Of a DNA stretch of 64,000 nucleotides, positions 4,829 through 54,374 are shown one piece after another. The first letter of the stretch is position 1. The number at the start of each line of letters is the position of its first letter. Made by a program: the position numbers and the translations under genes. Under the pieces are notes generated by a model, which saw only the letters and a list, made by a program, of their open reading frames with translations, ran no database searches and had not been told where the DNA came from. The stretch is from positions 1-64,000 of IMG/VR virus record IMGVR_UViG_3300013116_000108, one strand, 5' to 3'.

Positions 4829-5300
4829 GAAGAAAATTTATAGTTGGCATGACGTTGAAAAAATGTGTTCACAATTACTTGTACAACTTTACAACAGTGA
4901 ATGGAGACCTGATTACATTGTAGGTATTACACGTGGCGGGAATGTACCTGCTACAATTTTAAGTAACATGACAGGTATTAGATGTGAGGCTGTTAAGGTT
5001 GCTTTACGAGATGGCGAGTCTGGTAAAACTGGAGACAGTATTGCTTGGATGGCCGAAGATGCTAAAATGGGCAAAAATATTTTAGTAGTAGATGACATTA
5101 ACGATACTGGTGCTACTTTTAAATGGTTATCAGAAGACTGGGGTCTTAATGGTGGGGACAATGTTCGTTTTGCTACATTAACAGAAAACTTATCAAGTGA
5201 TTTCGATGGAGTCGATTATTACTGTGATGAAGTTAACAAAGCCGAAGAAGATGTTTGGCTTGTTTATCCTTGGGAAAATGTAGGTGAATATAATGGATAA
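4821..5300 (+). CDS. Type I phosphoribosyltransferase (xanthine/guanine PRT-like)
   Basis: IVGITRGG, PRPP-binding loop ILVVDDINDTGAT, terminal WLVYPWE. Confidence 0.85.
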   Translation: MIKKKIYSWHDVEKMCSQLLVQLYNSEWRPDYIVGITRGGNVPATILSNMTGIRCEAVKVALRDGESGKTGDSIAWMAEDAKMGKNILVVDDINDTGATFKWLSEDWGLNGGDNVRFATLTENLSSDFDGVDYYCDEVNKAEEDVWLVYPWENVGEYNG

Positions 5301-5559
5301 AGAATACAAAAAATACACTTGTAAGTATAAAGCCGAATGGCCAGTTGATAAATTTGGTAGGATTGGTGGTATGTATAGTACGGCTGATTTACCTGTTCAA
5401 GGTTATGTAGAATTGGAAAGAACGGGCACTTTAGTATCCCAAGATTCCAAACGTGAAATGTACGAAGTACAAGATGGCGAAAGAATGTTTGTAAAGAGGG
5501 TGGTTCCTTTTACAAAAGTCACAGATATAGAGGAAGTCGTTAATGAATCAGATAAATAA
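5293..5559 (+). CDS. Hypothetical protein
   Basis: Operon-packed ORF; ATG 5293 preferred. Confidence 0.6.
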   Translation: MDKEYKKYTCKYKAEWPVDKFGRIGGMYSTADLPVQGYVELERTGTLVSQDSKREMYEVQDGERMFVKRVVPFTKVTDIEEVVNESDK

Positions 5560-5673: not shown

Positions 5674-6159
5674 ATGGCTAATGCCAAACAAAAAAAATAT
5701 GTTTCAACAAAAACGTACAGACAAGGATTTCCAGTTGCTTACAGACAATGGAGAGCCGACAGTCATTGTAATATAATTCATGGATATGCTTTGAGTTTCC
5801 ATTTTGAGTTTGAGTCAGATGACTTAGATGTAAGAAATTGGGTTATGGACTTTGGCGGTTTAAAACCACTAAAACAATTATTAGAAGATTGGTTTGATCA
5901 TACACTATTGTTAGCACTTGATGATCCAAACTATGATGATTTTAAGAAACTAGGCGAACTAGGACTAGCAAAGATTACAGAAGTTGAAAAAACAGGCTGT
6001 GAAGGTATTGCTGATTTCTTGTATGAATATATCAATACTATTTTCTTAAAAGATTATGGTGAAGCAGATAGAATATGGTGTTCTAGAGTAGAAGTAAGAG
6101 AAACAGATTCTAATATGTCCTACAGACAAGGACATAGAGAAGATGGCGATTTTGAATAA
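5674..6159 (+). CDS. queD: 6-carboxy-5,6,7,8-tetrahydropterin synthase (QueD/PTPS family)
   Basis: [29 protein letters not shown] motifs of the T-fold QueD family. Confidence 0.85.
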
Positions 6160-6175
6160 TAATAAAGGAGATAAC

Positions 6176-6763
6176 ATGGCATTAATACCAATTGTAGTAG
6201 AACAAACATCAAAAGGCGAACGTAGTTACGACATTTATAGTAGACTATTAAAAGACCGTATTGTAATGTTAAGCGGTGTAGTTGAAGAAAATATGTCAAA
6301 TGCCATTGTTGCTCAATTACTATTTTTAGAAAGTCAAGATCCTGAAAAAGATATTACACTATATATTAACTCACCTGGTGGTTCAGTAACTGCTGGAATG
6401 AGTATGCTTGATACAATGAACTTTATTAAACCTGATATCTCAACTGTAGTTATGGGCCAGGCTTGTTCGATGGGTTCATTGTTAGCAAGTTCAGGTACTA
6501 AAGGTAAACGTTTTATGTTACCTAATGCTAGACACATGATACATCAACCCTTAGGTGGATTTAGTGGACAAGCAACTGACGTAGAAATTAGAGCAAACGA
6601 GTTGTTACGTTGGAAGAAAGTATTAACTGAAGTGTATGTTACTAACACAGGCAAAGACTTTGATACATTAAGTAAAGACATGGATCGTGATAACTTTATG
6701 ACAAGTGAAGAAGCGGTTGCTTACGGACTTGCTGATAAAATTATTGCCGAAAGAGAAAAGTAA
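6176..6763 (+). CDS. clpP: ATP-dependent Clp protease proteolytic subunit
   Basis: [33 protein letters not shown], catalytic Ser in QACSMG, His in MIHQP, Asp in RDNFM. Confidence 0.97.
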
Positions 6764-22737: not shown

Positions 22738-22813
22738 TGGTGGAGGATACCAGGATCGAACTGGTGACCTCCTGAATGCAAATCAGGCGCTCTCCCATCT
22801 GAGCTAATCCCCC
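22738..22813 (-). tRNA. tRNA-Ala(UGC), CCA encoded
   Basis: 76 nt cloverleaf; acceptor GGGGGAT/ATCCTCC with G3:U70; anticodon arm CCTGA-TTTGCAT-TCAGG; GTTCGAT T-loop. Confidence 0.97.
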
Positions 22814-23190
22814 TATTTTGTATGTGAGTCTAATTCAACTAAACTAGTTTCTCTATCGATAAACTTGTATTCAACTTTTACTGGATCAAATTCTTTCATT
22901 AGATCAAAAATTAATTGAGGATCAAAGTCGGAACAAGAATAAACATCCAATTGAACTAGCCCTGGATTAGATTCATCCCAACAATGTAAAGCAATGTGAG
23001 ATGTTTCAATTATTACCAAACCAGTTAAGCCAGCATTACCAGGAACATCAACGTATGCTGTAATTGGACCTTGGCATATTTTCATGTCTAATTTTTTTAC
23101 TAGATCTGTTAGCCAAGCATGACACCAACTAGGATCGTCTGGAGTTTTTCTAGTTTCTGCCCTTACAATTAGATGTTTATGCTTCGTCAT
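22813..23190 (-). CDS. speD: Pyruvoyl-dependent S-adenosylmethionine decarboxylase-like proenzyme
   Basis: HKHLIV, GLTGLVIIETSHIALHCW, LDVYSC; substrate could be SAM, Arg or Orn. Confidence 0.85.
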   Translation of the reverse strand: MTKHKHLIVRAETRKTPDDPSWCHAWLTDLVKKLDMKICQGPITAYVDVPGNAGLTGLVIIETSHIALHCWDESNPGLVQLDVYSCSDFDPQLIFDLMKEFDPVKVEYKFIDRETSLVELDSHTK

Positions 23191-23402
23191 TTAAAGTACT
23201 TATTTAAAACTTCAATTCTATCATTTTGTGTTGCTATAATATCTAACTCTTTTTGTATTGTTTCCAATATATCTGAGTGTTCACCAATCCCTACTGTCTT
23301 GGCTAGGTACACATCAATATTAGTTTTATGTAATGCTATTTCACCATGAGCGTGGTCAATCAAACCACCAATGATGCGTTCTCTCATTTCCTGTTCAGAC
23401 AT
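23187..23402 (-). CDS. Small conserved-type phage protein
   Basis: Start MSEQEM after AAAGGA; VGIGEHSDI motif. Confidence 0.7.
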   Translation of the reverse strand: MSEQEMRERIIGGLIDHAHGEIALHKTNIDVYLAKTVGIGEHSDILETIQKELDIIATQNDRIEVLNKYFK

Positions 23403-23423
23403 GTTTTTTCCTTTCTTAATATC

Positions 23424-23499
23424 TGGTGCCGGCACACGGACTCGAACCGCGGACCTACTGATTACAAATCAGTTGCTCTACCAACTGAGCTATGCCGGC
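23424..23499 (-). tRNA. tRNA-Thr(UGU), CCA encoded
   Basis: 76 nt; acceptor GCCGGCA/TGCCGGC; anticodon arm ACTGA-TTTGTAA-TCAGT; GTTCGAG T-loop. Confidence 0.97.
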
Positions 23500-23522
23500 T
23501 ATCAATACTTATCCTACAGTAT

Positions 23523-24707
23523 TTAAACACCGTAATCTTCTTGTCCGCCTTCACGTTCAATATCTAGTGTAACACAATGCCATCCTGCGTCCCAGAAGTG
23601 CCTGTGTCTGTTTGGTACATGGATCATGTCAATACCATGTGAGTTGAATGTTTTTTCTAATTCTAAATTCTCAGCATTTACTACTGCTGTTTTTTCGTCT
23701 AGCATTAACAGATTAACATCAAAAACTGTTTCTTCTACAAACCCAACCCAATCGTCTAACCAGGTTTCTACAAAGTCTGTAAACTCAGCATTATCTTCTT
23801 CACCAGGCATCCACCATTTACCTTCGTTATGCTTTTTAATATCTAAAAACGGTCTTACTTGATTTAAGTTGCTTTCTGGTAAGAATATTTTATCCCAACC
23901 TGGGAAAGATTCAGCGTAATGTCCAATATCTTGTGTTGTTAATAATACGCCCGGTTTTAGCACATTAAAAACAGCATCATTATGACCACCAATAAAAACA
24001 CCTTTATAGTTGAACTGCGGATATGCCAATTCCATGTAGTCAGCAATATCTACTGCCTGTTGAGTATCAGCAAAACAAGTCTTTCCTACTCTAGTTAATT
24101 CCGGAGCACAAAACCCTGTCATTCTATCTGTTGTATGTTGCTCTTGTTCTAATTCTAATAATGTGTCAATATCGCTATCTTTAATACCTAACCGACCTAA
24201 TCTATTTCTGTGATTTGCTGTTGTTCTTGTAAACTTCTTTTTATTTTTAACAATGCTCCAATCAAAGTTATCACCAAACCATTTCTCAAGCAATGGAACC
24301 CATGGTTTGGATTCAAAAGCACTTCCAGTCATTACTACTTGATTGCCCATTGTAACAAAATCATCACGCGGATTAAGTGGTGGGACAGGTAGTTGATTTC
24401 TGCCCTTTTCATGTTGACCATGTTTATCACTTCCCATGCCCAACTTACCTTCTTCATCCAAATAGTCCATTATACTTGTTTTGTATCCAAGTTCTTCTGT
24501 TGTAGTAGTATATGTTTTAGCACCGAAGTCTTCTACTACCTTTTTTAAGTTATCTAAATCTTCTAATGTTTCACTAGCAATACGCTGAAGACAATCTCTT
24601 GCTTTAGAGTTTTTAACGTCTTCAAAAAATTCTGGAGGATAAGTTGTACCAATTACTAATTGTTTGAGCGGTTGGAATTCGCTCCATGAGTTTACTTTAT
24701 TTGTCAT
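23523..24707 (-). CDS. Amidinotransferase (pentein; glycine/inosamine-phosphate amidinotransferase-like) copy 1
   Basis: VNSWSEFQPLKQLVIG, PRDD, GGHND, FDVN, AGWHCVTLD. Confidence 0.85.
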   Translation of the reverse strand: MTNKVNSWSEFQPLKQLVIGTTYPPEFFEDVKNSKARDCLQRIASETLEDLDNLKKVVEDFGAKTYTTTTEELGYKTSIMDYLDEEGKLGMGSDKHGQHEKGRNQLPVPPLNPRDDFVTMGNQVVMTGSAFESKPWVPLLEKWFGDNFDWSIVKNKKKFTRTTANHRNRLGRLGIKDSDIDTLLELEQEQHTTDRMTGFCAPELTRVGKTCFADTQQAVDIADYMELAYPQFNYKGVFIGGHNDAVFNVLKPGVLLTTQDIGHYAESFPGWDKIFLPESNLNQVRPFLDIKKHNEGKWWMPGEEDNAEFTDFVETWLDDWVGFVEETVFDVNLLMLDEKTAVVNAENLELEKTFNSHGIDMIHVPNRHRHFWDAGWHCVTLDIEREGGQEDYGV

Positions 24708-25059
24708 TTAATGATTCTCTGTGTTTAGTTAAATCGTCGGGGAAATCCCTGTATAAGAAATGCTGTATTGTTTCCAGTTCAACATACTTGTTAAAGCCGT
24801 GATGCTCGTCTTCAATCTTGTTTTCGTTTGTTACTACACTAGACATGGCATCATCTAGTTGTTGCATATTTTTAAATTCCATATCAATACGAAATTCCGG
24901 TAATTCCATTGAACGAAATCCTAATTTCATTCTTGTAATTCTATATGATTCCATTCGTCCTGCTTGAACTAACTTATCTAAGAATTTAGTCATATATCTT
25001 ATGAATTCATGAGCTGTGACCTCTTCGGTATGATCTGAGTAAATAGTATAAACATCCAT
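24697..25059 (-). CDS. DUF6614-like dimeric alpha-beta barrel protein
   Basis: YRITRMKLGFR..LPEFRIDMEF..MQQLDDAM..LYRDFPD; start moved to MDVY. Confidence 0.6.
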   Translation of the reverse strand: MDVYTIYSDHTEEVTAHEFIRYMTKFLDKLVQAGRMESYRITRMKLGFRSMELPEFRIDMEFKNMQQLDDAMSSVVTNENKIEDEHHGFNKYVELETIQHFLYRDFPDDLTKHRESLNDK

Positions 25060-25125
25060 TTGATAACTTCCTTTTGTATTTAATATATAAGTAATTATCA
25101 GAGCATATAACAGAAAAACAAATTC

Positions 25126-25809
25126 ATGAAAGTTTATTACGATCACATTTACGGAACCATGGAAAACATGGATATCCGTTGTACAGAAATATTAGCAAAA
25201 CACGTTAAACCAGAAGAAGAATTAAAAGCATTAGACATGGGCTTTTTGTGGTCTAAGGTTGCTGACGATGGCGAAATATGGTATAACAGTCGTTCAGTTA
25301 GAGTTGATTTAAGCACCTGGAAAACAAGAAGAAGTAAGCCTGTTTGGAATAATGTAAAAGAACTTAAAAGAACTGATCCTCGCTGGCCTACTATGTACCG
25401 CGATTATATAAAAAGTAAAGGCTTGTATCCGTACCCAGGTGATGACGAACTACACAAAGAAAACAAACTGCTTGGCTACTTTGATGACAATGACAAATTA
25501 TTAGGATTGTCTAAATTACGTGAATATGTGGGAGCCTGGGAGACTTGTGTATTTGTACATGACCATTCTATTCCTAACTTCGGACGTATAACACTTGACC
25601 ATGAAATTCATCTTGCTACTATGTTAGGACATAAACACATTTACATTGGTTCTGGTTATGAGAAAACTTGTATATACAAAGGCAAGTTAAAAGGTTTTGA
25701 ATTTTGGACTGGCGAAAAATGGAATAGCAATAAAGAAGATTACATTAAACTTTGTCAGCGTGATAGTCTTGTTAGGACTTTACAGGATCTTCATGATGTC
25801 TCCAGTTAA
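25126..25809 (+). CDS. ATE1/Bpt-like aminoacyl-tRNA-protein transferase
   Basis: ALDMGF, SRSVRVDL, MYRDY, FGRITLDHEI..A..LGHKHIYIG.GY...CIYK...GFEFW match the ATE_N/ATE_C pattern (SLG...L..I..A...G..Y.YLGY...C.KM.YK). Confidence 0.7.
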   Translation: MKVYYDHIYGTMENMDIRCTEILAKHVKPEEELKALDMGFLWSKVADDGEIWYNSRSVRVDLSTWKTRRSKPVWNNVKELKRTDPRWPTMYRDYIKSKGLYPYPGDDELHKENKLLGYFDDNDKLLGLSKLREYVGAWETCVFVHDHSIPNFGRITLDHEIHLATMLGHKHIYIGSGYEKTCIYKGKLKGFEFWTGEKWNSNKEDYIKLCQRDSLVRTLQDLHDVSS

Positions 25810-26284
25810 CTACATCATCTAAATTTTCTTTACTCCAAACATCATAGTATCCTCTCTTTTTAAGTATACCACTAAACATTTGTATTTTACTCAATCGTTG
25901 CATTAACATAATAGGATATTTCCCATTGTTCATTATTATACCGTTAATGTTTTCTTCTTCATCTGGGTGGTCTTCTAACACCACAAAATCCTGCTCCATT
26001 AAATAAAGTTTATTTGTATTTTCTACCATAACACTTAAATTAGTAGAATTAATATTAGGAACAAAAATACAACATACATCTGTATCCTCATTCCAGCGTT
26101 TTGCTTTTTCTTTAAGGTATGAGTCAATTTTAATTTCACATACTTCAAACTCTACTTTGTTATCTATTATTGCCTGCTTGGCAAAAGGACATGGCGGAAA
26201 GTTGTTTAGGTCTGGATTTGGTTGCGATACAAAATCGTCTATCCATTTTAGGATATAAGTTTGTGCTTCTTCTAAATTAAACAT
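25772..26284 (-). CDS. DUF1415-like protein
   Basis: WI..FV..PN..LNNFPPCPFAK, EDHPD, YPIMLMQRL. Confidence 0.55.
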   Translation of the reverse strand: MFNLEEAQTYILKWIDDFVSQPNPDLNNFPPCPFAKQAIIDNKVEFEVCEIKIDSYLKEKAKRWNEDTDVCCIFVPNINSTNLSVMVENTNKLYLMEQDFVVLEDHPDEEENINGIIMNNGKYPIMLMQRLSKIQMFSGILKKRGYYDVWSKENLDDVVNWRHHEDPVKS

Positions 26285-27194
26285 TGAATGTATCCGAATG
26301 TATTTCTAAGTTAGTGTCATATAACTTTGCTATTACAATAGAATTAGAAGAATACCTAACCCTTGCTATAATAATCATAAGTTCGTTAAATGATGTTGTC
26401 AAATAAGTCATCATAGAAGTTAAAAAGTTTCCTATAAGCCAAACTGTATCAGTTGGATATAATTCTAACTTTTCTTTTAATTCATCTATTGTAGAAAATG
26501 TATCACTATGTTCGTAATCTTTAACAATTGATTTTATATCATCTGTAAAATTTTTGTGATACACAATATTTGTTTTTCCTGAGTTACGGAGTATGGATTT
26601 ATGTGACGGAGATACCTTCCATGGATTTTCTAAATAGATATCTTTGGGGAAATCATCAACAGTCCATTTAGTATAATCTATATCGTTTTGAGAACGATCA
26701 TAAATCATTGTATTATCTACAATAATTTTTAAGTTATTTGCCTTACAGCATTCTTCTATTTCAGCAATATTATTACTTTTATAAACATAACTATAATTAG
26801 GATTTATAATAAAGTACTTGTCGTGGTCTCCCCTAACTAGGCCCCAATCATTACCTAAACTTCCAATCTTATCTACTAAATCGTTTCTAAAAGATATGCC
26901 TAACATTACTCCTGGCTTAATAACTATAATACCATAAGTAGCAATTAAACTAGTATGTGCTGTCCACGATATTCTATGTAAATCATCACCTACGTTATAT
27001 GCTACATTGTCACATGATAAATCATTTGAAGACCCAGGCACCGTACATCTATAATAGTATGCTGTTCTTTGTGCTAAGTTATGTGTTTGTAAGTCAGCAT
27101 GATCGGAGTAAATTAAATATAAGCAACTGCCCTTGTTAGTAGTTGCCTTTTCCTCTATTGTATTTTTAGTATCACTTATTATTGTTAATGGCAC
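26277..27194 (-). CDS. Hypothetical protein
   Basis: 305 aa ORF, overlapping neighbours. Confidence 0.6.
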   Translation of the reverse strand: MPLTIISDTKNTIEEKATTNKGSCLYLIYSDHADLQTHNLAQRTAYYYRCTVPGSSNDLSCDNVAYNVGDDLHRISWTAHTSLIATYGIIVIKPGVMLGISFRNDLVDKIGSLGNDWGLVRGDHDKYFIINPNYSYVYKSNNIAEIEECCKANNLKIIVDNTMIYDRSQNDIDYTKWTVDDFPKDIYLENPWKVSPSHKSILRNSGKTNIVYHKNFTDDIKSIVKDYEHSDTFSTIDELKEKLELYPTDTVWLIGNFLTSMMTYLTTSFNELMIIIARVRYSSNSIVIAKLYDTNLEIHSDTFNV

Positions 27195-27658
27195 ACTAAT
27201 ATCGCTCCTTCTCGTAATGTTAATTTGCTTATGGATTCATTTAAAGAATCTAACCTAGTATTATTTGTTTTGTAAACTAATACATCGCTGTTATCAAAAG
27301 ATGTGATAGTATCTTTTTCAATATAAAATATTTTTTTAAAATTGGTAATCTCAACTTCTTGCGGTAATACTAAATTGTACAATATAATTTTCTTTAATTT
27401 TAAAAATTCAATCCATTGATCTAATATTTTAGTATTATTAAGTTCAACAAGGTACCCTTCTTTACTATTCCATATAACCATACCTTCAGATCCAACTTTA
27501 TATTTCATTGACCTTAATTCTATTATAAGTTTAATATCAAGTGTTTCTACTCTCAAGTGTGAAAGAGTATCTACTTCCTTGATATCAAATTCTTTATCAA
27601 TAGGCTTTGGTGTACTAGTCAATTTTCTATTGACGATTGAAGTTGTTTTGAGTGTCAT
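27185..27658 (-). CDS. Hypothetical protein
   Basis: 157 aa ORF after TAAATA motif. Confidence 0.6.
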   Translation of the reverse strand: MTLKTTSIVNRKLTSTPKPIDKEFDIKEVDTLSHLRVETLDIKLIIELRSMKYKVGSEGMVIWNSKEGYLVELNNTKILDQWIEFLKLKKIILYNLVLPQEVEITNFKKIFYIEKDTITSFDNSDVLVYKTNNTRLDSLNESISKLTLREGAILVCH

Positions 27659-27683
27659 GATTACCTTTATTTTAGGTATTTAT

Positions 27684-28619
27684 TTACGCGGCAATCGGTG
27701 CGGCTTGAAAACGTTTTCCAAAGATATTTTTAGTAAACAATCCCCAATCAGCATCTTTAGGATGCCATTCTTTTTTAGGAATTTCGCCGTTACTAAACTG
27801 CCATAGCCAACTACCAACACAACATGCTTCAGCATAATGCCAAGCACTAGCACCTTGTGTAGCAGGAACTCTAGTGTAGTAAAGTTCATTCTGAGGTTTC
27901 TTAAATTTAGTACCATTAATATTACAAAATATATCTAAGTAACTGTCTGTATGATTATACAAATGTCCTTCTTTACTATTGTGAACAATATCCCTATACT
28001 TCTTGCTCAGATACAACCAATTTAAACTATAATCATGGTTGTGATAAGGCAAATATAATGAGTGGCTTATAGTTTCAGCAATATAGTTTCTACTTCTTAA
28101 ACTTATTTCTGTAAAATGTTCTGTACCACTTTGTACAATATCTTTATATAACCTAGGATCTAAATTAGGAGCAATAGGTGTTCGGCCGTCCCACATATTT
28201 GGATTCATTCCAATATAATAATCAAGTCGGTCAACTGTTGAATATTCTCCTATCATTACTGCTGACATCATATCCATTAAACCTGAAAAAACGCCAATAC
28301 CATCTACTATGTTTTTTCCTGTTCCGTGAAACATGTCTGTTCTATTAATAGTAATAAGTGTATTATGCTCTGTCATAGCATTTGCTAGAGCATGAGTTAC
28401 ACCAAAGTCGCTATTACTAACAATATAATCGTGATTTTTTGTTATATCTTCTGGTGTAAAATTAGAAAACGGTAATGCTCCTTGTGAGAGTGTTTTACCT
28501 ACAGATGTATCATCAAACCAAGTACAAACAACTTCTGTATTAAACCGATTCTTTTGTCTAGTGATAACGCTTCTAATTGCGGATCCTAGTTGGCCGTTAC
28601 ATACTATTGCTACTCTCAT
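27684..28619 (-). CDS. Saccharopine dehydrogenase / carboxynorspermidine dehydrogenase-like NAD(P)-binding protein (degenerate)
   Basis: N-terminal Rossmann MRVAIVCNGQLG, G.GVFSGL.D, YIG pattern. Confidence 0.5.
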   Translation of the reverse strand: MRVAIVCNGQLGSAIRSVITRQKNRFNTEVVCTWFDDTSVGKTLSQGALPFSNFTPEDITKNHDYIVSNSDFGVTHALANAMTEHNTLITINRTDMFHGTGKNIVDGIGVFSGLMDMMSAVMIGEYSTVDRLDYYIGMNPNMWDGRTPIAPNLDPRLYKDIVQSGTEHFTEISLRSRNYIAETISHSLYLPYHNHDYSLNWLYLSKKYRDIVHNSKEGHLYNHTDSYLDIFCNINGTKFKKPQNELYYTRVPATQGASAWHYAEACCVGSWLWQFSNGEIPKKEWHPKDADWGLFTKNIFGKRFQAAPIAA

Positions 28620-28872: not shown

Positions 28873-29022
28873 ATGAGTAAAGACGACCAACGTGCTTGGA
28901 ATATGTTTAAAATATCAAACGGTGGACAATTATGGACCAGTTGTGATTTATGTAAAACGTTTTGTCTTGGCTTAATTGCTGGACTTTGTATAACTTTTAT
29001 ACTTGTTGCTATTATTTTGTAG
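28873..29022 (+). CDS. 49-aa Cys-containing membrane peptide
   Basis: AAGGGA RBS; CDLC and C-terminal TM helix. Confidence 0.5.
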   Translation: MSKDDQRAWNMFKISNGGQLWTSCDLCKTFCLGLIAGLCITFILVAIIL

Positions 29023-31111
29023 TAGCAACATACACACCATCCCATTCTTTAGGTGGAGGATTTTTCTTAAATTCTTCAATCCTATCTGTGATGATTTCGT
29101 AATAACTATCTAGAGAACCACTAAACTGCCCCTTAAGATTATCAATACAATCTTTACAATGTTTCCAATCTTGTTTACGATAACTTTTTCTCAATTCTAT
29201 ATGTAGTTTAACAAATTGCATTACAGTTGGTAAGTCATGTATTCCAACAACATCAGGATCTAATACTGTGTAAATAGCAACCGGTTCTGTTTTGCCTTTT
29301 ACAGCAATTTGATCTAGTTCTAAAATTGTATGTTTATCAGATAAACTCCTTGCTGTTTCTTCGCCAAATAATATTTTCACACCATATCCTTTCGTTTGTC
29401 CTTCTAACCTAGCGGCTAAATTAACAGCATCACCTAAACAACTGTAATCAAATCTTTGATCTGATCCCATATTTCCAACTACGGCATCACCTGTATTAAG
29501 TCCAATGCCTATGTTAATTGGTAGTTTATTTTCTGCCGTTAACTGAGTATTTAACTCCTCTAATCCCTTTAACATCAATAAACTGGTATCAACTGCCTTG
29601 TCAGCCTGTTCGTCAACATCTAAAGGAGCGTTCCAAAATGCCATAATACAATCGCCCATGTATTTGTCGACCGTACCTTCTTTTTCCATAATAATATTTG
29701 TCATAGGTGTTAAGAACCTGTTAACTAATTCTGTTAAACCTTGTGGATTAGTTTTGAATTGTTCTGATATAGGAGTGAACCCTCTAATATCGCAAAACAG
29801 CAATGTAAGTTTTCTAGTATCTCCACCTAGTTTTAATAAGTCTGGATCTTTTTGTAATTTCTTAACCATGCTCGGTGCTAGGTAATGTTCAAACTGCTTT
29901 TTGATTTGTTGCTTTAATCTAAACTCTTTTACAAATCTATTAAACACAGCATGGAAGCCAACAATTAATAACATTAATGCCGGCATTGTAGGATCTATTA
30001 ACCATAACTTAGATTGGAACAAATATGTCACGCCATATACTATGCCATTTAAACTAGCAATAATAACAACACCACTAAACCAATAAGGAGCAAAGGCTAC
30101 AATAATAACAAGTAACATGCCCATAGCAATAATGCCACCTAGTTCATATAAATCCGCCCACATAGGACGTTCAACAGTTTCGCCTAATATAATTGTGCTT
30201 AGTGTACTGCCTATAATTTCATGTGGATATTTTTCACCTATAGGTGTACCAACTGGATTGCCTAATCCTTCTGCTGTTAATCCTATAATAACTGTTTTAC
30301 CTTCAATACTTTGTAAACTATCTACAGTATAATCTAATGTAGGAATGTCAGCATTCCAACGTAAAAATAATCTACCCCTGTCATCAGTTTTAATAATTCC
30401 TCTGTTAACAGGAAAACCTTTTACTCTAACACTATCTATTCCATAAGGCGTAGTTTTCATTTGATAACTGTCTACGCCCATCATTACTCTTAGTGTTTCT
30501 ACTGCTATATTAGGATATAAATCTCCTTGTACATTTATAAGCAAAGGAACACGTCTTACAACGCCATCTACCTCTGGTGCTGTAGTTATTACACCTACAC
30601 CATCAACAACGTCTGCTAGTTCTTTTAGAGGCCCTAGCATACCTGAATATGTAAACAAGTTATTAGCCGCATCTTTGTTACCGCCAACCATACTAACACC
30701 ACGTGGTATACCTGTTGTGCTTTTTTGTATGCTACCTGTTTGTGCTATAACTACACCATTCTGGTATAGTGTTTCCATAAATTCCTGATCTTTGAGAAAT
30801 CTATCTGCTTCACTAAACAGTACAGGTAATACAATAACGCCTGCTCCGTTTTCGCGAAGTTCCCAAATAAGATTGGAAATTAAATCTCTTGGCCAAGGCC
30901 ATTGGCCATTTGTTTCGATACTTGCTTCCCCCAATGTTACATAAACAAGATTATTATCTACATAAGGTTCTTCTTTTTGTAATTGATAATCAAAACTTTT
31001 TAATTTTGCTGTTTGTACTACCCAAGGATTTAAGAATACTATATAAGCAATAGCAAATACAGTTAAAAAAGGTATACTCCAATGTGTTAGAATTCTACTT
31101 AACTTCGACAT
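29012..31111 (-). CDS. CHASE2-domain class III adenylate cyclase
   Basis: N-terminal TM, CHASE2 (GQWPWPR, DGVVRRVPLL), 3 TM helices, FCDIRGFT, DKYMGD (ATP-specifying Lys), FDYSCLGDAVNLAARLE. Confidence 0.92.
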   Translation of the reverse strand: MSKLSRILTHWSIPFLTVFAIAYIVFLNPWVVQTAKLKSFDYQLQKEEPYVDNNLVYVTLGEASIETNGQWPWPRDLISNLIWELRENGAGVIVLPVLFSEADRFLKDQEFMETLYQNGVVIAQTGSIQKSTTGIPRGVSMVGGNKDAANNLFTYSGMLGPLKELADVVDGVGVITTAPEVDGVVRRVPLLINVQGDLYPNIAVETLRVMMGVDSYQMKTTPYGIDSVRVKGFPVNRGIIKTDDRGRLFLRWNADIPTLDYTVDSLQSIEGKTVIIGLTAEGLGNPVGTPIGEKYPHEIIGSTLSTIILGETVERPMWADLYELGGIIAMGMLLVIIVAFAPYWFSGVVIIASLNGIVYGVTYLFQSKLWLIDPTMPALMLLIVGFHAVFNRFVKEFRLKQQIKKQFEHYLAPSMVKKLQKDPDLLKLGGDTRKLTLLFCDIRGFTPISEQFKTNPQGLTELVNRFLTPMTNIIMEKEGTVDKYMGDCIMAFWNAPLDVDEQADKAVDTSLLMLKGLEELNTQLTAENKLPINIGIGLNTGDAVVGNMGSDQRFDYSCLGDAVNLAARLEGQTKGYGVKILFGEETARSLSDKHTILELDQIAVKGKTEPVAIYTVLDPDVVGIHDLPTVMQFVKLHIELRKSYRKQDWKHCKDCIDNLKGQFSGSLDSYYEIITDRIEEFKKNPPPKEWDGVYVATTK

Positions 31112-39452: not shown

Positions 39453-39995
39453 TTACCATCTCTTAGTAACTCCAAAGTGTTTAAATGTTTTCTGAACACA
39501 TTTTGCTTGATAATAACAATCAGCCAAAGCATTATGTAAGTCTTCTTGAATTGCTTTACGCGGATCAACTGGCATTAAATTAAATAAAGTCCTCGAATCT
39601 TGTATTTGCCAAAAGTTCCACGGTGTAGGGGTGTTTAGTTGTCTATATAAATGTTCTAAAATAGCAATATCAAACACTGGTCCTTGAGCCCATATTTTGT
39701 CTACACCAACAAGACTTTTATTAAGTTGTTCTAATACTTGTGTTAAATTTGTACGTCCTTCTTCTGACAATGCTTCGTTTCTTACTTTAGCATCTTGTTT
39801 GCCCCACCAAGCCATTGTATCATCATCTACACTTCTATTTAAATCATTTTGTTCGTTGATGTCTAATTTCAGGTACAAACCATCATAAGGTTCGCTATCC
39901 GAATATGGATCAAACTTTATAGCACCTAGAGATGTAATAACACAATCTGGTTTTGTTCCAAATGTTTCTAAGTCGATCATAGCATGAACAGACAT
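39453..39995 (-). CDS. DEDDh 3'-5' exonuclease (DexA-like)
   Basis: MIDLET, WAQGPVFD, DSRT, HNALADC. Confidence 0.85.
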   Translation of the reverse strand: MSVHAMIDLETFGTKPDCVITSLGAIKFDPYSDSEPYDGLYLKLDINEQNDLNRSVDDDTMAWWGKQDAKVRNEALSEEGRTNLTQVLEQLNKSLVGVDKIWAQGPVFDIAILEHLYRQLNTPTPWNFWQIQDSRTLFNLMPVDPRKAIQEDLHNALADCYYQAKCVQKTFKHFGVTKRW

Positions 39996-39997
39996 TG

Positions 39998-40306
39998 TTA
40001 TTCCTTTTCTATTTTTACTTGTAATGGGAAACCTCTGCTTCGAGCAAGTACTGTTACTTCTATTCCTTTTTGCTCAGCAATTTCATAAGGTAATACGGCT
40101 ACTACAGCCATGCCATCCTCGTGGATTTTTACTGTAATGCCTTCAGCGTCATCTGGATTGTAATCAAATATGTCTAATAATGTTTCAACAACAAATTCCA
40201 TTGTTGTTAATTCGTCATTCATATAAATGACTTTATACAGGCCAGGTTCAGTAACTTTTATTCGTGTTACTGTGGACGGTTTTTCTTTTATTTGTGTGTC
40301 GCTCAT
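39998..40306 (-). CDS. clpS: N-degron adaptor ClpS
   Basis: PGLYKVIYMNDELTTMEFVV, VHE/IHEDG.AVV, EIAEQK, FPL. Confidence 0.93.
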   Translation of the reverse strand: MSDTQIKEKPSTVTRIKVTEPGLYKVIYMNDELTTMEFVVETLLDIFDYNPDDAEGITVKIHEDGMAVVAVLPYEIAEQKGIEVTVLARSRGFPLQVKIEKE

Positions 40307-40330
40307 AGTTACCTCTTGTTAGTAACTGTT

Positions 40331-40359
40331 ATTATAACAAAAATTGAGTATGTTGTCAA
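40331..40359 (-). promoter_or_regulatory. Sigma70-type promoter for clpS operon
   Basis: Perfect TTGACA-N17-TATAAT. Confidence 0.85.
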
Positions 40360-40365
40360 GAAAAA

Positions 40366-40400
40366 AGATAGGATTAGCCAAAATAAACTAACCCTATCTT
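40366..40400 (-). terminator. Probable intrinsic terminator after hsp20
   Basis: AAGATAGG...CCTATCTT inverted repeat with T-run on minus strand. Confidence 0.6.
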
Positions 40401-40416
40401 CAATTGTTAACTAGAA

Positions 40417-40845
40417 TTATTTGATACTAATTGTTCTTGGCTTTTTGGCCTCAGGAACAATTTTCTCCAATGATACTTTTAGTAAGCCATCTTTTAATTC
40501 CGCCCCATTTACAACTACGTCATCAGCAATAGTGAAAGATCTCTTGAATTGACGTTTTGAAATTCCTCTGTGTAATACACTTGGATCTTCGCTTTCGTCT
40601 TTTTCACTTTGAACTGAATTAACAGTTAGATTGTTATCAGCATATTTTACTTCAATGTCTTTTTTGCCAAATCCGGCTAAAGCCATTTCGATGTCATATG
40701 TGAAGTCACCTGTTTTTACGATATTGTATGGTGGAAAATTCACTTGTGGCATATCTGTCATACGTTCAAATGTATCGAACATATCGTCGAAGCCTACTGT
40801 GAATGGTTTAAGGTTATTAAAGATAGATAGTCTTGCGTTTGTCAT
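40417..40845 (-). CDS. Small heat-shock protein Hsp20/IbpA
   Basis: FPPYNI, MALAGF, LHRGISKRQF.RSF, LKDGLL, PEAKKPRTI. Confidence 0.95.
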   Translation of the reverse strand: MTNARLSIFNNLKPFTVGFDDMFDTFERMTDMPQVNFPPYNIVKTGDFTYDIEMALAGFGKKDIEVKYADNNLTVNSVQSEKDESEDPSVLHRGISKRQFKRSFTIADDVVVNGAELKDGLLKVSLEKIVPEAKKPRTISIK

Positions 40846-42894: not shown

Positions 42895-43200
42895 CTAGTA
42901 CATTCTCTTTTGAGAAAATCCCCATTGTGCTTCTTGTTCACGTTGTTTCTTTAACCAACGATTACGGCCTGCTTTTTTGGCTAGTCTTTTCTTTTCGCTA
43001 GGTTTTATAAAATACTGCCTATCTCGACATTCTTGTAAAGTATTGTCTGCTTGGAGTTTTTTCTTTAGTTTTCTTAATGCCTTTGTGACATCATTGTTGT
43101 GAACTATAACAGTTGTTCCACCTGTTAAATCTTGAGCTCTTTTAGGTTGATTTCTATTACCAAAGCCTGCTCTGTTATTGCTTTTTCTATTTACAAACAT
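42895..43200 (-). CDS. rpsU: Ribosomal protein bS21
   Basis: V.V.NNDVTKALRKLKKK....E...RQYF.KPSEKKR. Confidence 0.88.
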   Translation of the reverse strand: MFVNRKSNNRAGFGNRNQPKRAQDLTGGTTVIVHNNDVTKALRKLKKKLQADNTLQECRDRQYFIKPSEKKRLAKKAGRNRWLKKQREQEAQWGFSQKRMY

Positions 43201-44363
43201 TAAGCCTCCTGTACGTCTGTGTCATTAATAATTACTTCCTTTCCTTTAAGTTGATCTAACTCGTAATAGTATTCAAGCAAAGTATTTTCTAATATACCTT
43301 TTAATGCTCTAGCACCTACCTTATATTGTAACGCAAGTTCGACTATTTTGTCAAGTGCTTTCTCCGAAAATATCAAACTAACATTATCTAAATCAAAATA
43401 GAACCTAGTTTGCTCAATTAGGTTATTATCAATATCAGCCAATACTTGTTTTAATTCATCTTTGGAAAGTTCTGTTGTTTGAACAACAACTGGAAAGCGA
43501 CCAATAAATTCAGGTATCATTCCAAAGTCAATTAACTCGCTTGAAATTAGTTTACTTTGGCCTCCGTGTGTTTCTCCAAACCCAATAGTATTTGTTTTTT
43601 GGCTGTCCATTCCAACAAATGCTCCACTTCCAATAAACAAAATCTTACTAGTATCTACTTCAATCATTTCTTGCTGTGGATGTTTTCTTCCACCTTGTGG
43701 TGCTACTCTAACAGTTGTACCTTCAACTAATTTTAACAATGCTTGTTGTACACCTTCGCCTGAAACATCTCTAGTAATTGAAACGTTCTCACTTTTCCTG
43801 CCAATTTTATCAATTTCATCTAAAAATACAATACCTTGTTCTGCTCTTGCTACATTGTAATCTACTTTCATTAGCAAAGAACTAATAATACTTTCAACAT
43901 CATCACCAACATACCCACTTTCAGTTAAACTTGTAGCATCAGCAATTACAATAGGCACATCTAAAAACTTAGCAATTTGTTTTGCCATAAAAGTTTTACC
44001 ACTACCAGTAGGACCAATTATTAATTGATTATTCTTTTCAATAGTACCTTTTCTATCATACATTAATCTCTTGTAGTGATTTACTACACCTACTGCCATA
44101 TGACGTTTTGCTTTATGTTGTCCAACTACTGTTTCGTCTAAAAATGCTACAATCTCTTTTGCTGTTTTGGGTTCTAATTCCTTTGCCCATTGCTTTGCCT
44201 TTTCATCTGTGAGGACTTTACTACACAAATCTATACATTCATCACAAATACCAACACCTTCTGCTACAATAATCTTGTATACTTGGTCTTTTGTTTTGCC
44301 ACAAAAATTACACTGACTGACTGAACGAATTTGATCTATACTAGTTGATTTATCATCTGTCAT
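43200..44363 (-). CDS. clpX: ATP-dependent Clp protease ATP-binding subunit ClpX
   Basis: Zinc finger CNFCGK..CDEC, GPTGSGKT, GYVG pore loop, DEIDK, RDVSGEGVQQALLK, RKH loop, IGF loop; start 44363 or 44393. Confidence 0.96.
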   Translation of the reverse strand: MTDDKSTSIDQIRSVSQCNFCGKTKDQVYKIIVAEGVGICDECIDLCSKVLTDEKAKQWAKELEPKTAKEIVAFLDETVVGQHKAKRHMAVGVVNHYKRLMYDRKGTIEKNNQLIIGPTGSGKTFMAKQIAKFLDVPIVIADATSLTESGYVGDDVESIISSLLMKVDYNVARAEQGIVFLDEIDKIGRKSENVSITRDVSGEGVQQALLKLVEGTTVRVAPQGGRKHPQQEMIEVDTSKILFIGSGAFVGMDSQKTNTIGFGETHGGQSKLISSELIDFGMIPEFIGRFPVVVQTTELSKDELKQVLADIDNNLIEQTRFYFDLDNVSLIFSEKALDKIVELALQYKVGARALKGILENTLLEYYYELDQLKGKEVIINDTDVQEA

Positions 44364-44730
44364 TTGAGAGCCTTTTTTGTAATATCCAGTCAACTGGAAC
44401 TGTTAGTTTTCTATTATTTAATGAATCGTAATTCTCTTCATGATGTATATCATCACACCACCAAACGTTTGGCATAGACATCAAGTACCCTGTAACAATT
44501 TTATTTTCATATTCATTGCTTACAATAACTACAGATGATCTAGTTGCTGTATTAACAATCCAATCAACTTTGCTATTTTGTTCGCCTATGTGTAAACTAT
44601 AATCGCCGTATTTAGGTAATTCCTTAATATATTGCTCAACTGTCCAGTTATCACAACCTACAAGGAATACACTTTCTTGTTTACCAAACCAATAATCTGG
44701 TTCTGTTACTACTGTTACATTATTGTCCAA
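44353..44730 (-). CDS. Hypothetical protein
   Basis: Operon-packed. Confidence 0.6.
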   Translation of the reverse strand: MDNNVTVVTEPDYWFGKQESVFLVGCDNWTVEQYIKELPKYGDYSLHIGEQNSKVDWIVNTATRSSVVIVSNEYENKIVTGYLMSMPNVWWCDDIHHEENYDSLNNRKLTVPVDWILQKRLSNDR

Positions 44731-53983: not shown

Positions 53984-54037
53984 ATTTTTTTCCTTTACAT
54001 ATATGTAAAGACCCTCGCCACTAGAGGCGAGAGCCCT

Positions 54038-54341
54038 CTTCTAGAAGATTTCTGTTGATAGGCATCTTCCAAACCCCGAGCAACTATGCCGCTAAGGCAA
54101 AGTCCTCATGAAACACATTATCGTTTGCGTTTATACGTTTTGTTCGCGTTAACCGAGCTTACATCCGGGCAACTCCACTCTCCTAATAACTACCTGTCGA
54201 TCCTTTTTCAACCCCATCATAAACACATTCATATAATCACACCAAAATCTGTGTTGTTACTTTTGGAATGTGTTTATGGTGGAGTTGCTGGGTACCGCCC
54301 CCAGGTCCAGATTAGCGTTTGAATAACTTCATCGTTACGAC
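54038..54341 (-). ncRNA. ssrA: Circularly permuted two-piece tmRNA; acceptor piece ends CCA at 54277, coding piece starts at 54215; tag ANDNVFHEDFALAA (54128-54084)
   Basis: ...GGCGGTACCCAGCAACTCCACCA precedes GGGGTTGAAAAAGGATCGAC; acceptor GGGGTTG/CAACTCC with G3:U70; 13-bp inverted repeat bounding the intervening segment; outer ends approximate. Confidence 0.93.
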
Positions 54342-54345
54342 ATTA

Positions 54346-54374
54346 TTTATAACATAAAGTAGAAAAAATGTCAA
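54346..54374 (-). promoter_or_regulatory. Composite sigma70 and late promoter for tmRNA
   Basis: TTGACA-N17-TATAAA whose -10 extends to TATAAATA. Confidence 0.8.

What the first reader, a model, noticed from the sequence alone, without database searches (positions are those of the whole stretch)
23523..26284. ATE/Bpt-like transferase inverted within an amidinotransferase-DUF6614-DUF1415-like cassette
The only substantial + strand gene in a long - strand stretch. It is divergent from a DUF6614-like protein and overlaps a DUF1415-like protein (CPFA) tail-to-tail. It keeps the C-terminal ATE signature but lacks obvious N-terminal Cys pairs. Phage aminoacyl-tRNA-protein transferases are essentially uncharacterised; the cassette could be an arginine-centred protein-modification unit as well as the ClpS writer.
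Basis: partly seen in the sequence, partly recalled or inferred. Interest (0 to 1): 0.7.

Follow-up and report, generated by a model that had tools for sequence, protein, structure and literature searches.

The report
Phage Bpt-like transferase paired with haem oxygenase
A marine jumbo phage carries a stripped-down, virus-only relative of the enzymes that add an amino acid from a charged tRNA onto proteins. It is always locked gene-to-gene with a small predicted haem oxygenase, so it looks like a new two-enzyme tailoring unit rather than an ordinary protein-degradation tagger.

Summary
Window 25126-25809 (+) is a real 227-aa gene, the only credible + strand gene between about 18.4 and 64 kb. 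It lies divergent from a DUF6614 gene and overlaps a 170-aa gene tail-to-tail by 38 bp.

Profile and fold evidence place it in the Bpt/ATE1 aminoacyl-tRNA transferase lineage over its whole length. It keeps the catalytic Tyr-Lys. It lacks all four metal-binding Cys and the Arg that reads acidic N-termini. Its donor pocket resembles ATE1 (Glu160), not Bpt.

The "inversion" is not local. The arrangement DUF6614< transferase> partner< recurs in most of 80 diverged viral loci, always with a 17-66 bp convergent overlap.

The partner belongs to the DUF6875/DUF1415 (cytochrome P422) superfamily. It folds like AglA, a Cys-ligated haem arginine-conjugate N-hydroxylase.

My preferred reading is a dedicated aminoacyl-tRNA ligase plus haem oxygenase tailoring module, probably using a cationic amino acid such as Arg, with an unknown acceptor. 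A ClpS-feeding N-degron writer remains a live rival, because these phages also encode ClpS, ClpP and a ClpX-like ATPase.

The family is unannotated, nearly virus-restricted, and had no tblastn match in 50,697 GenBank phage records. I class it as a new variant of a known kind.

The parts
25126..25809 (+). 227-aa Bpt/ATE1-like aminoacyl-tRNA transferase. It lacks the metal-binding Cys. Catalytic Tyr184-Lys185 are kept, the donor pocket carries Glu160, and Arg56 and Arg59 are invariant.
25772..26284 (-). 170-aa DUF6875/DUF1415-superfamily protein (cytochrome P422 / AglA-like fold). It is a predicted Cys32-ligated haem oxygenase and the transferase's obligate convergent partner.
   Evidence: linkage
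25772..25809 (.). 38-bp tail-to-tail overlap of the two convergent genes. No terminator-like site lies between them.
   Evidence: All 64 convergent pairs in related loci overlap by 17-66 bp.
24697..25059 (-). DUF6614 protein, 120 aa counted from Met30 of the longest ORF. It has a dimeric alpha/beta-barrel (Dabb/EthD-like) fold and is the most conserved member of the triad. It is divergent from the transferase.
   Evidence: linkage
25060..25125 (.). 66-bp divergent spacer between the DUF6614 and transferase start codons. It holds no sigma-70-like site. RNA-library contigs end at 25066.
23523..24707 (-). 394-aa amidinotransferase (AGAT/HsvA/StrB1-like) with Cys-His-Asp positions aligned. It is an accessory neighbour, present in 10 of 81 loci.
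39998..40306 (-). Phage ClpS (N-recognin adaptor). This is context for the N-degron rival and is not adjacent to the module.

Best explanation
The + strand gene encodes a compact, virus-restricted offshoot of the Bpt/ATE1 aminoacyl-tRNA transferases.

Shown by sequence and predicted fold:
- The two-lobed Bpt architecture is kept over the whole length.
- The GNAT catalytic Tyr-Lys is kept (Tyr184-Lys185, matching klAte1 Tyr303-Lys304).
- The C4 metal site is lost, and so is the GFRRSG arginine that reads N-terminal Asp/Glu.
- The donor pocket is polar and acidic like ATE1 (Ser/Thr140, Ser/Thr156, Glu160), not like the Leu-transferase Bpt (Ala, Ala, Gln).
- The gene is one leg of a conserved triad: DUF6614 (divergent), transferase, and a DUF6875/DUF1415 AglA-like protein with an invariant Cys-Pro (convergent and overlapping).

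Inferred mechanism:
- The transferase takes a cationic aminoacyl group, most likely Arg, from a charged host or phage tRNA.
- It forms an amide, or possibly an O-aminoacyl, bond on a specific acceptor that is not the canonical Nt-Asp/Glu.
- The haem-thiolate partner hydroxylates the acceptor beforehand or the aminoacylated product afterwards.
- DUF6614, a Dabb/EthD-like small protein, serves as an accessory.
- In this phage the neighbouring amidinotransferase adds or supplies a guanidino group.

I therefore read it as a dedicated 'aminoacylate and oxidise' tailoring module. It would act on one defined target, either a small amino-acid-derived molecule or one particular protein. I do not read it as a general N-degron tagger.
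For: Homology and fold:
- The family profile hits ATE1 structures at E 3e-8.
- 43 of 60 members hit ATE_C.
- hhalign against 11 genuine Bpt gives probability 98.2% and E 2.5e-13 over the full length.
- All top 30 AFDB Swiss-Prot matches are Bpt.

Active site:
- Lys185 is present in 59 of 60 sequences, Tyr/Trp184 in 58 of 60 and Glu160 in 57 of 60.
- These positions were mapped onto klAte1 Lys304, Tyr303 and Glu277.
- Sampled Bpt have Gln at the Glu position in 8 of 11 and Ala at both Ser positions.

Module:
- The partner is present in 70 of 81 loci. In 64 it lies immediately downstream on the opposite strand, always overlapping by 17-66 bp.
- DUF6614 is present in 41 of 81 loci, and in 39 it is immediately upstream and divergent.

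Partner:
- 31 of 35 members hit DUF6875.
- DUF6875 is cytochrome P422, a Cys-ligated haem family that hydroxylates free Trp (bioRxiv 10.64898/2025.12.11.692455).
- AglA is a Cys44-ligated haem enzyme that N-hydroxylates an arginine conjugate (PMC12866846).
- AFDB and ESM Atlas neighbours are DUF6875 and DUF1415 families.

Precedent: the argolaphos gene cluster holds a YqcI/YcgG haem enzyme together with two GNAT proteins proposed to be aminoacyl-tRNA-dependent peptide ligases (PMC8976061).

Small-molecule-type neighbours: amidinotransferase in 10 loci and radical SAM genes in many.
Against: - No biochemistry exists for any member. Donor, acceptor, haem binding and the order of steps are all inferred.
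- Glu at the donor position is not exclusive to Arg-transferases. Two of 11 sampled Bpt also have Glu there.
- The fold is closest to protein N-terminal transferases, and the N-lobe is strongly conserved (Gly39, Trp52, Arg56, Arg59). This fits a peptide acceptor as well as a small one.
- The phages carry ClpS, ClpP and a ClpX-like gene.
- The complex prediction gave no answer on any physical contact.
- Radical SAM and amidinotransferase genes are variable neighbours and may be unrelated.
- About 10 loci carry the transferase without the partner next to it.
Confidence: 0.42

Rival explanations
1. N-degron writer. The enzyme adds a destabilising, or secondary-destabilising, residue to the N-termini of host or phage proteins. 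The phage's own ClpS then hands these to ClpAP-type proteases. The haem partner may create or edit the N-terminal residue.
For: - The nearest families are the two known N-degron transferases, matched over the whole length.
- ClpS is present in the window with its NDx.T.MEFV and H..G motifs.
- ClpS is present in every record of the jumbo type that is at least 56% complete: own, G001, G002, G003 and G005.
- The window also encodes ClpP, a ClpX-like AAA+ ATPase, Hsp20 and a tmRNA.
Against: - The Arg equivalent to klAte1 Arg80 is essential for Nt-Asp/Glu recognition (PMC9351520) and is invariant in 11 of 11 sampled Bpt. It is Leu, Ile, Ala, Ser or Thr in all 60 phage sequences.
- The predicted donor is cationic, whereas ClpS reads Leu, Phe, Tyr and Trp (established knowledge).
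- No Aat gene was found in the 204 kb held.
- ClpS is never adjacent to the module, and its co-occurrence may only reflect a shared clade.
- The strict gene partner is an oxygenase family known so far to act on free amino acids or small conjugates.
Confidence: 0.28
2. Anti-defence or host-takeover module. The triad modifies or depletes a host molecule, such as a charged tRNA, a signalling nucleotide precursor or an immune protein, to blunt bacterial immunity.
For: - An ORF predicted to be DUF6614 in phage DruSM1 was reported to have anti-Druantia type I activity (bioRxiv 10.1101/2024.04.14.589459).
- DUF6614 is the most conserved member of the triad, with 72% mean column identity.
- The family is almost confined to viruses.
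Against: - The DruSM1 assignment is a prediction in a preprint about an unrelated phage.
- Nothing links the transferase or the haem protein to any defence system.
- No PADLOC or defence context was examined.
Confidence: 0.1
3. FemX/aaPGS-like envelope enzyme. It aminoacylates a peptidoglycan precursor or a lipid instead of a protein.
For: - FemX, aaPGS/MprF and L/F-transferase follow closely in the fold searches.
- A distant relative, P0142, lies directly behind a Mur ligase in a 492-kb cellular-looking contig.
Against: - Only ATE1 and Bpt align with the N-lobe and the whole chain. FemX and aaPGS align with 136-172 residues of the GNAT core.
- No membrane segment or Mur-type neighbour appears in any phage locus.
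Confidence: 0.06
4. Pseudoenzyme or structural relic. The fold is retained but catalysis is lost.
For: The metal site and the acceptor Arg are lost, and the window's own protein scores below every curated threshold.
Against: The catalytic Lys, the adjacent Tyr, the pocket Glu and the GFEWWTG..W motif are near-invariant across 60 sequences at about 30% identity.
Confidence: 0.04

Closest known systems
Bacterial Bpt (Asp/Glu leucyltransferase; Pfam ATE_N + ATE_C)
   Same: Similar size (227 aa against about 235-270 aa). The two-lobed fold matches over the whole chain: all top 30 AFDB Swiss-Prot hits, TM 0.53-0.67 by query, and hhalign probability 98.2%. Also shared are the YxG.GY...YK catalytic motif, the conserved Arg of the 'vRi' strand (Arg59), and the Leu-like fourth pocket residue.
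   Different: No Cys pairs. The 'RP.C..C' segment is deleted. GFRRSG is replaced by G[WF][LIAST], so the acidic-N-terminus Arg is missing. The donor pocket is Ser/Thr, Ser/Thr, Glu instead of Ala, Ala, Gln. The family has its own C-terminal GFEWWTG..W...D extension. Its genomic context is viral, with a haem partner.
Eukaryotic ATE1 arginyltransferase (PDB 7WG1, 7TIF, 8E3S, 8TZV)
   Different: ATE1 is about 500 aa with long insertions and a C-terminal domain. It has a C4 Zn/Fe-S site and Arg80, both absent here.
Cytochrome P422 (DUF6875) and AglA/DcsA (YqcI/YcgG) thiolate-haem hydroxylases, compared with the 170-aa partner
   Different: The sequence motif is xPPCP[YF]A rather than RxGxVCP. The P422 Trp-binding motifs were not recognised. 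The phage family has its own invariant set (Asp105-His106-Pro107, Glu111, Asn119, Gly121, Tyr147, Trp150, Arg162). Haem binding is untested.
Natural-product pathways that couple an aminoacyl-tRNA-dependent GNAT-fold ligase with an N-oxygenase. Examples: the argolaphos cluster (AlpD/AglA with AlpF/AlpO) and, from my own knowledge, valanimycin (VlmH/VlmA).
   Same: The same pairing of enzyme types: an amino acid is taken from tRNA to build an amide or ester, and a hydroxylase acts on an N-H of the same molecule.
   Different: Those ligases belong to the FemX/PF13480 or MprF-like branches, not the Bpt/ATE branch. They sit in large bacterial gene clusters, not in a three-gene phage module. No product is known here.

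Membership tests
Bpt/ATE aminoacyl-tRNA-protein transferases | Homology of the GNAT (ATE_C) core | tested here: met
   The profile hits ATE1 at E 3e-8, 43 of 60 members hit PF04377, and hhalign against Bpt gives 98.2%. The window protein alone stays below the curated cut-offs.
Bpt/ATE aminoacyl-tRNA-protein transferases | Catalytic Lys (klAte1 Lys304 / FemX Lys305) preceded by an aromatic residue | tested here: met
   Lys185 in 59 of 60 and Tyr/Trp184 in 58 of 60 sequences; role taken from PMC9351520.
Bpt/ATE aminoacyl-tRNA-protein transferases | ATE_N lobe with the four-Cys metal (Zn or Fe-S) site | tested here: not met
   No ATE_N Pfam hit in any of 60 members. The lobe's fold is kept, but the first Cys pair is replaced and the second lies in a deleted segment.
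Bpt/ATE aminoacyl-tRNA-protein transferases | Basic residue of GFRRSG (klAte1 Arg80) that recognises N-terminal Asp/Glu | tested here: not met
   The aligned position 41 is Leu, Ile, Ala, Ser, Cys or Thr in all 60 sequences. It is Arg in 11 of 11 sampled Bpt.
Bpt/ATE aminoacyl-tRNA-protein transferases | Aminoacyl transfer from aa-tRNA to a protein N-terminus | not testable with these tools
   This needs an in vitro transfer assay.
ATE1-type (Arg) versus Bpt-type (Leu) donor pocket | Acidic residue at klAte1 Glu277 with polar Ser255 and Ser273 | tested here: met
   Glu160 in 57 of 60, Ser/Thr140 in 41 of 60 and Ser/Thr156 in 34 of 60 sequences. Bpt has Gln in 8 of 11 and Ala at both Ser positions. 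Specificity itself is only inferred.
Cytochrome P422 (DUF6875) / DUF1415 / AglA-like thiolate haem proteins (170-aa partner) | Family HMM match | tested here: inconclusive
   The window protein scores 18.3 bits against a cut-off of 24.5. 31 of 35 family members match DUF6875 (best E 1e-6) and 4 match DUF1415.
Cytochrome P422 (DUF6875) / DUF1415 / AglA-like thiolate haem proteins (170-aa partner) | Sandwich fold | tested here: met
Cytochrome P422 (DUF6875) / DUF1415 / AglA-like thiolate haem proteins (170-aa partner) | Conserved N-terminal Cys-Pro axial ligand | tested here: met
   Cys32 and Pro33 are invariant in 35 sequences and lie inside the stretch that matches the DUF6875 profile.
Cytochrome P422 (DUF6875) / DUF1415 / AglA-like thiolate haem proteins (170-aa partner) | Haem binding and oxygenase activity | not testable with these tools
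   This needs UV-visible and CO-difference spectra and activity assays.
Amidinotransferases (AGAT/StrB1/HsvA) | Catalytic Cys with His and Asp in the C-terminal module | tested here: met
   GWHC aligns with AGAT GGFHC, and GGHND aligns with NPHID. The protein has no Pfam hit of its own.
DUF6614 | Pfam PF20319 above the curated cut-off | tested here: met
   82.2 bits against a cut-off of 25. Dabb/EthD-like fold according to the ESM Atlas.

The most novel reading that the evidence does not exclude
The triad is a viral, oxygenase-coupled N-terminal (or side-chain) arginylation system. The haem-thiolate enzyme oxidises a residue, or the appended arginine, on a specific protein. The Cys-less Bpt-like enzyme writes the aminoacyl mark. 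The phage's own ClpS/ClpP machinery or another reader interprets it. This would be a bacterial-virus counterpart of the eukaryotic oxidation-then-arginylation N-degron branch, with the redox sensor moved out of the transferase into a separate haem protein.
Probability: 0.1. Interest if true: 0.85.

Novelty: new variant of a known kind. Interest (0 to 1): 0.64.

Why it matters
Aminoacyl-tRNA transferases of the Bpt/ATE branch are known only as N-degron writers that act on acidic N-termini. Here a large branch of at least 529 viral loci has no annotation and gave no tblastn match in 50,697 GenBank phage records. It has dropped both the metal site and the acidic-N-terminus reader. It keeps the catalytic core and is wired to a member of the thiolate-haem P422/AglA family, which was characterised only in 2025.

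If the module is active, it would show two new things. It would be a new acceptor class for this enzyme branch. It would also be the first phage use of tRNA-borne amino acids for tailoring chemistry, or alternatively a phage-run N-degron pathway.

Either outcome can be tested directly with three small, well-folding proteins.

Tried and rejected
- Single-sequence searches of the 227-aa protein were almost empty. Pfam gave only DUF7506 at E 0.12. PHROGs gave nothing. PDB phmmer gave nothing. NCBIfam arginyltransferase reached only E 0.011. Profiles were needed.
- The word-index homologue search found only close relatives.
- tblastn of two family members against 50,697 GenBank phage records gave no match.
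- ATE_C searched in the phage's own genome gave no hit even at E 1.
- A three-chain complex prediction (transferase + partner + DUF6614) scored 0.00. The tool says this is neither evidence for nor against binding.
- I tested whether a linked tRNA names the donor and rejected the idea. tRNA-Thr and tRNA-Ala next to the cassette are seen again only in the close relative L002, and most of the 60 loci scanned have no tRNA.
- I looked for a conserved RNA between segE and DUF6614. There was no Rfam hit in six loci.
- An HMM search for hidden, diverged copies of the partner or DUF6614 in loci that seem to lack them found none.
- ClpS co-occurrence across 50 other records is uninformative for most, because they are estimated at 5-33% complete.
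- Bpt was not present in the five MAGs that carry relatives. Bpt sequences were instead taken from a class-level sample. Genome G054 is unpublished, and its locus L097 was not used. It counts only in the tally of 18 of 41, on which no claim here rests.
- I rejected the idea that DUF6614's N-terminal Asp is the acceptor. Homologues start with either MD or MAD, so no common exposed Asp is expected.
- RNA-library data are unstranded assembler contigs from relatives. They show presence only.
Full report
**Setting.** The window is the first 64 kb of a 204.1-kb IMG/VR virus record estimated at 56% complete. G+C is about 34%. Sequencing runs that hold it are marine or seawater metagenomes. Close relatives come from Tara and other marine assemblies on contigs up to 408 kb. 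Related contigs carry T4-type genes: gp46/gp47-like nuclease subunits, segE, a baseplate protein and the gp20 portal. Their sizes and completeness estimates imply genomes of roughly 340-400 kb, and one record of 338 kb has terminal repeats.

**Observation.**
- 23523-24707 (-) is an amidinotransferase relative. phmmer hits AGAT structures at E 6e-11, then HsvA, StrB1 and SxtG. The catalytic Cys (GWHC) and the His/Asp stretch align.
- 24697-25146 (-) is DUF6614 (E 3.8e-23). The Pfam domain and every homologue begin at Met30, so I place the start at 25059. This leaves a 66-bp spacer to the ATG at 25126.
- 25126-25809 (+) is the 227-aa target.
- 25772-26284 (-) overlaps it tail-to-tail by 38 bp.

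From 18.4 kb to the end of the window, the target is the only + strand ORF of at least 150 aa that is not nested in a longer - strand ORF.

**The target is a Bpt/ATE1-lineage protein.**
- On its own it reaches no curated threshold. The only hint is NCBIfam arginyltransferase at E 0.011.
- An exhaustive search found 144 representatives at 50% identity.
- A 60-sequence alignment (A1) gives a profile that hits yeast ATE1 structures at E 3e-8.
- 43 of 60 members individually touch ATE_C, and none touches ATE_N.
- The AF2 model is confident: pLDDT 94.8, pTM 0.90.
- Foldseek against the PDB puts human and yeast ATE1 first. The other aminoacyl-tRNA transferases follow (aaPGS/MprF, FemX, L/F-transferase).
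- Against AlphaFold Swiss-Prot models, all 30 best matches are bacterial Bpt, aligned over essentially the whole chain.
- I took 11 genuine Bpt genes from a class-level genome sample. Profile-profile alignment with them gives 98.2% probability and E 2.5e-13 over the full length.

**What is kept and what is lost.** I used the klAte1 mutagenesis paper (PMC9351520). The 7WFX numbering is native +4, read.

Kept:
- The catalytic Lys304 and Tyr303 correspond to Lys185 (59 of 60) and Tyr/Trp184 (58 of 60).
- The Arg-pocket Glu277 corresponds to Glu160 (57 of 60).
- Ser255 and Ser273 correspond to Ser/Thr140 and Ser/Thr156.
- Tyr289 corresponds to Leu/Val/Ile172.

The paper gives Ala168, Ala185, Gln189 and Leu201 for the Leu-transferase Bpt. 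My 11 Bpt show Ala 11/11, Ala 9/11 and Gln 8/11 (Glu 2, Thr 1) at the first three of these positions. The donor pocket therefore resembles the arginyl-transferase at three of four positions. Donor specificity for a cationic amino acid is an inference from this, not a result.

Lost:
- The first Cys pair of the C4 site.
- The 'RP.C..C' segment that holds the second pair.
- The first Arg of GFRRSG (klAte1 Arg80). Charge reversal at this residue abolishes activity on Nt-Asp/Glu. It is Arg in 11 of 11 Bpt but is never basic in the phage family.

Arg59 matches the conserved Arg of the following strand. Arg56 is a family-specific invariant whose place in the pocket I could not check, because model coordinates are not exposed.

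**The gene is part of a conserved triad.** A pattern scan of IMG/VR gave at least 529 confirmed loci, and the best 80 were fetched. I called ORFs and clustered them.
- The 170-aa neighbour's family occurs in 70 of 81 loci. In 64 it lies immediately downstream on the opposite strand.
- DUF6614 occurs in 41 of 81 loci. In 39 it lies immediately upstream and divergent.
- The amidinotransferase occurs in 10 loci.
- HMM searches found no hidden, diverged copies of either neighbour.
- Every one of the 64 convergent pairs overlaps by 17-66 bp. The divergent spacer is never longer than 56 bp when measured from the longest ORFs.

These loci share only about 30% identity in the transferase. The 'inverted' orientation is therefore the ancestral layout of a module, not a local rearrangement.

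In most loci the module sits between gp46/gp47 (often with a radical SAM gene and segE) and baseplate or portal genes. In the window and its close relatives it sits in a different neighbourhood together with the amidinotransferase.

**The partner.**
- An alignment of 35 members (A2) shows these invariant residues: Trp14, Phe18, Cys32, Pro33, Ala35, Asn91, Asp105, Glu111, Gly121, Tyr147, Trp150 and Arg162. Pro31, His106, Pro107 and Asn119 are near-invariant.
- 31 of 35 members hit DUF6875 and 4 hit DUF1415.
- A December 2025 preprint renames DUF6875 'cytochrome P422'. These are Cys-ligated b-haem enzymes that hydroxylate free tryptophan or form a C-S bond. The ligand Cys lies in an RxGxVCP motif.
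- The AF2 model has pLDDT 93.1. It has no strong Foldseek PDB match.
- AglA (YqcI/YcgG family) has Cys44 as axial haem ligand. It N-hydroxylates the guanidine of an arginine-aminomethylphosphonate conjugate (PMC12866846).
- AlphaFold cluster and ESM Atlas neighbours are DUF6875, DUF1415 and a Trp-dioxygenase-DUF6875 fusion. Many of the ESM Atlas clusters are viral.
- tblastn finds distant relatives in cyanophages, Puniceispirillum phage HMO-2011 and a roseophage.

I conclude that the partner is a predicted thiolate-haem oxygenase. Haem binding is not shown.

**DUF6614.** It is the most conserved of the three, with 72% mean column identity. Language-model and structure look-alikes are Dabb, EthD, NIPSNAP, DUF1330 and HapK, which are small dimeric alpha/beta-barrel proteins. 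One preprint reports anti-Druantia activity for an ORF predicted to be DUF6614 in an unrelated phage.

**Distribution.**
- No match in 50,697 GenBank phage records with two different family members.
- Only seven hits in 185,579 species genomes, all in MAGs and mostly on short contigs.
- Source names are 'hypothetical protein' throughout.
- A distant relative, P0142, lies directly behind a Mur ligase on a 492-kb contig that also carries ribosomal protein S20 and RuvA. Remote branches may therefore have FemX-like roles.

**The ClpS question.**
- The window does encode ClpS at 39998-40306 (-), PF02617 at E 4.5e-25. It has NDELTTMEFV and HEDG where E. coli ClpS, as I recall its sequence, has NDDYTPMEFV and HYQG.
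- The window also encodes Hsp20 next to ClpS, ClpP at 6143-6763, a ClpX-like AAA+ gene at 43200-44393 and a tmRNA.
- ClpS is found in all five jumbo-type records that are at least 56% complete. It appears only sporadically in smaller fragments.
- It is never near the module, and the records are related, so the co-occurrence may be clade history.
- No L/F-transferase gene and no plant-type ferredoxin gene were found in the 204 kb held.

**Expression hints.**
- No sigma-70-like site lies in the 66-bp spacer.
- One 11/12 match lies at 26402-26374 (-), upstream of the partner gene.
- No terminator-like site lies in the convergent overlap.
- Contigs from four metatranscriptomic libraries, which are unstranded and from relatives at 85-99% identity, cover 22842-25066. 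That is the amidinotransferase plus DUF6614, ending at the DUF6614 start. Apart from one 150-nt piece at 25113-25265, nothing covers 25337-27400.
- This is weak evidence that DUF6614 and the amidinotransferase form their own transcription unit and are more abundant in RNA than the transferase and its partner.

**Interpretation.** The homology and the module are well supported. The chemistry is inferred.

I favour a dedicated tailoring pair at 0.42. The transferase would move a probably cationic aminoacyl group from tRNA to a specific non-canonical acceptor, and the haem enzyme would hydroxylate the substrate or the product. My reasons:
- the acidic-N-terminus reader is gone;
- the obligate partner belongs to families known to act on free amino acids or small conjugates;
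- amidinotransferase and radical SAM genes recur nearby;
- bacterial natural-product clusters already pair a YqcI/YcgG haem enzyme with GNAT proteins proposed to be aminoacyl-tRNA-dependent ligases.

The N-degron writer reading is at 0.28. It is kept alive by the whole-length Bpt fold, the strongly conserved N-lobe and the phage's Clp toolkit. The anti-defence, envelope-enzyme and pseudoenzyme readings are minor.

The complex prediction gave no usable answer.

**Novelty.** This is a new variant of a known enzyme kind in a new, conserved genomic partnership. It is not a new category.

Noticed in passing
window 53993-54369 (-): A phage-encoded tmRNA with tag peptide ANDNVFHEDFALAA. Together with ClpP and a ClpX-like gene, it suggests the phage brings its own ssrA-tag proteolysis route.
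   Followed up: no
window 39453-40845 (-), 43200-44393 (-), 6143-6763 (+): A proteostasis set: Rv2179c-like 3'-5' exoribonuclease, ClpS, Hsp20, an AAA_2 (ClpX-like) ATPase and a strong ClpP (E 1e-80).
   Followed up: partly
window 29012-31111 (-); L107 14896-20690: A 699-aa CHASE2 sensor fused to an adenylate/guanylate cyclase domain. In a 79%-identical relative it is followed by FecR-like and CsgG-like genes. This is an unusual signalling or secretion-like block for a phage.
   Followed up: no
window 5674-6159 (+) and 43-3909 (+): A PTPS/QueD-like gene (a possible 7-deazaguanine pathway) and a 1288-aa protein with a subtilase domain.
   Followed up: no
window 22738-22813 (-) and 23424-23499 (-): tRNA-Ala(UGC) and tRNA-Thr(UGU) lie just beyond the amidinotransferase. 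Of the 60 loci scanned, only the close relative L002 shows the same pair.
   Followed up: yes
window 26277-28619 (-): Three further - strand genes (305, 157 and 311 aa) follow the partner gene. They are conserved only in close relatives and have no family match.
   Followed up: partly
L007, L010, L015, L018 and other loci, about 5217-5474 (-): A conserved ORF-like stretch ('cluster 15', 68-85 codons, low-complexity peptide) lies between segE and DUF6614 in 12 loci. It may be non-coding. There was no Rfam match.
   Followed up: partly
L010 3737-4747 (+); L061 3835-5100 (-): Two radical SAM gene families (about 337 and 422 aa) recur within a few genes of the triad in many T4-like loci. They may belong to the same pathway or be mere neighbours.
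   Followed up: no
L105 4646-6699: A distant ATE_C-like relative (P0142) starts 4 bp inside the end of a Mur ligase gene. The 492-kb contig also carries ribosomal protein S20 and RuvA. This hints at a FemX-like role in a remote branch.
   Followed up: no
L048 2437-8035: A 10-tRNA array next to a partner-less copy of the transferase. It includes a tRNA with a CTA anticodon, which ARAGORN calls Pyl.
   Followed up: no
window 22842-25066: Metatranscriptome contigs cover the amidinotransferase and DUF6614 and stop at the DUF6614 start. The transferase, its partner and the downstream genes are nearly absent from the same libraries.
   Followed up: partly
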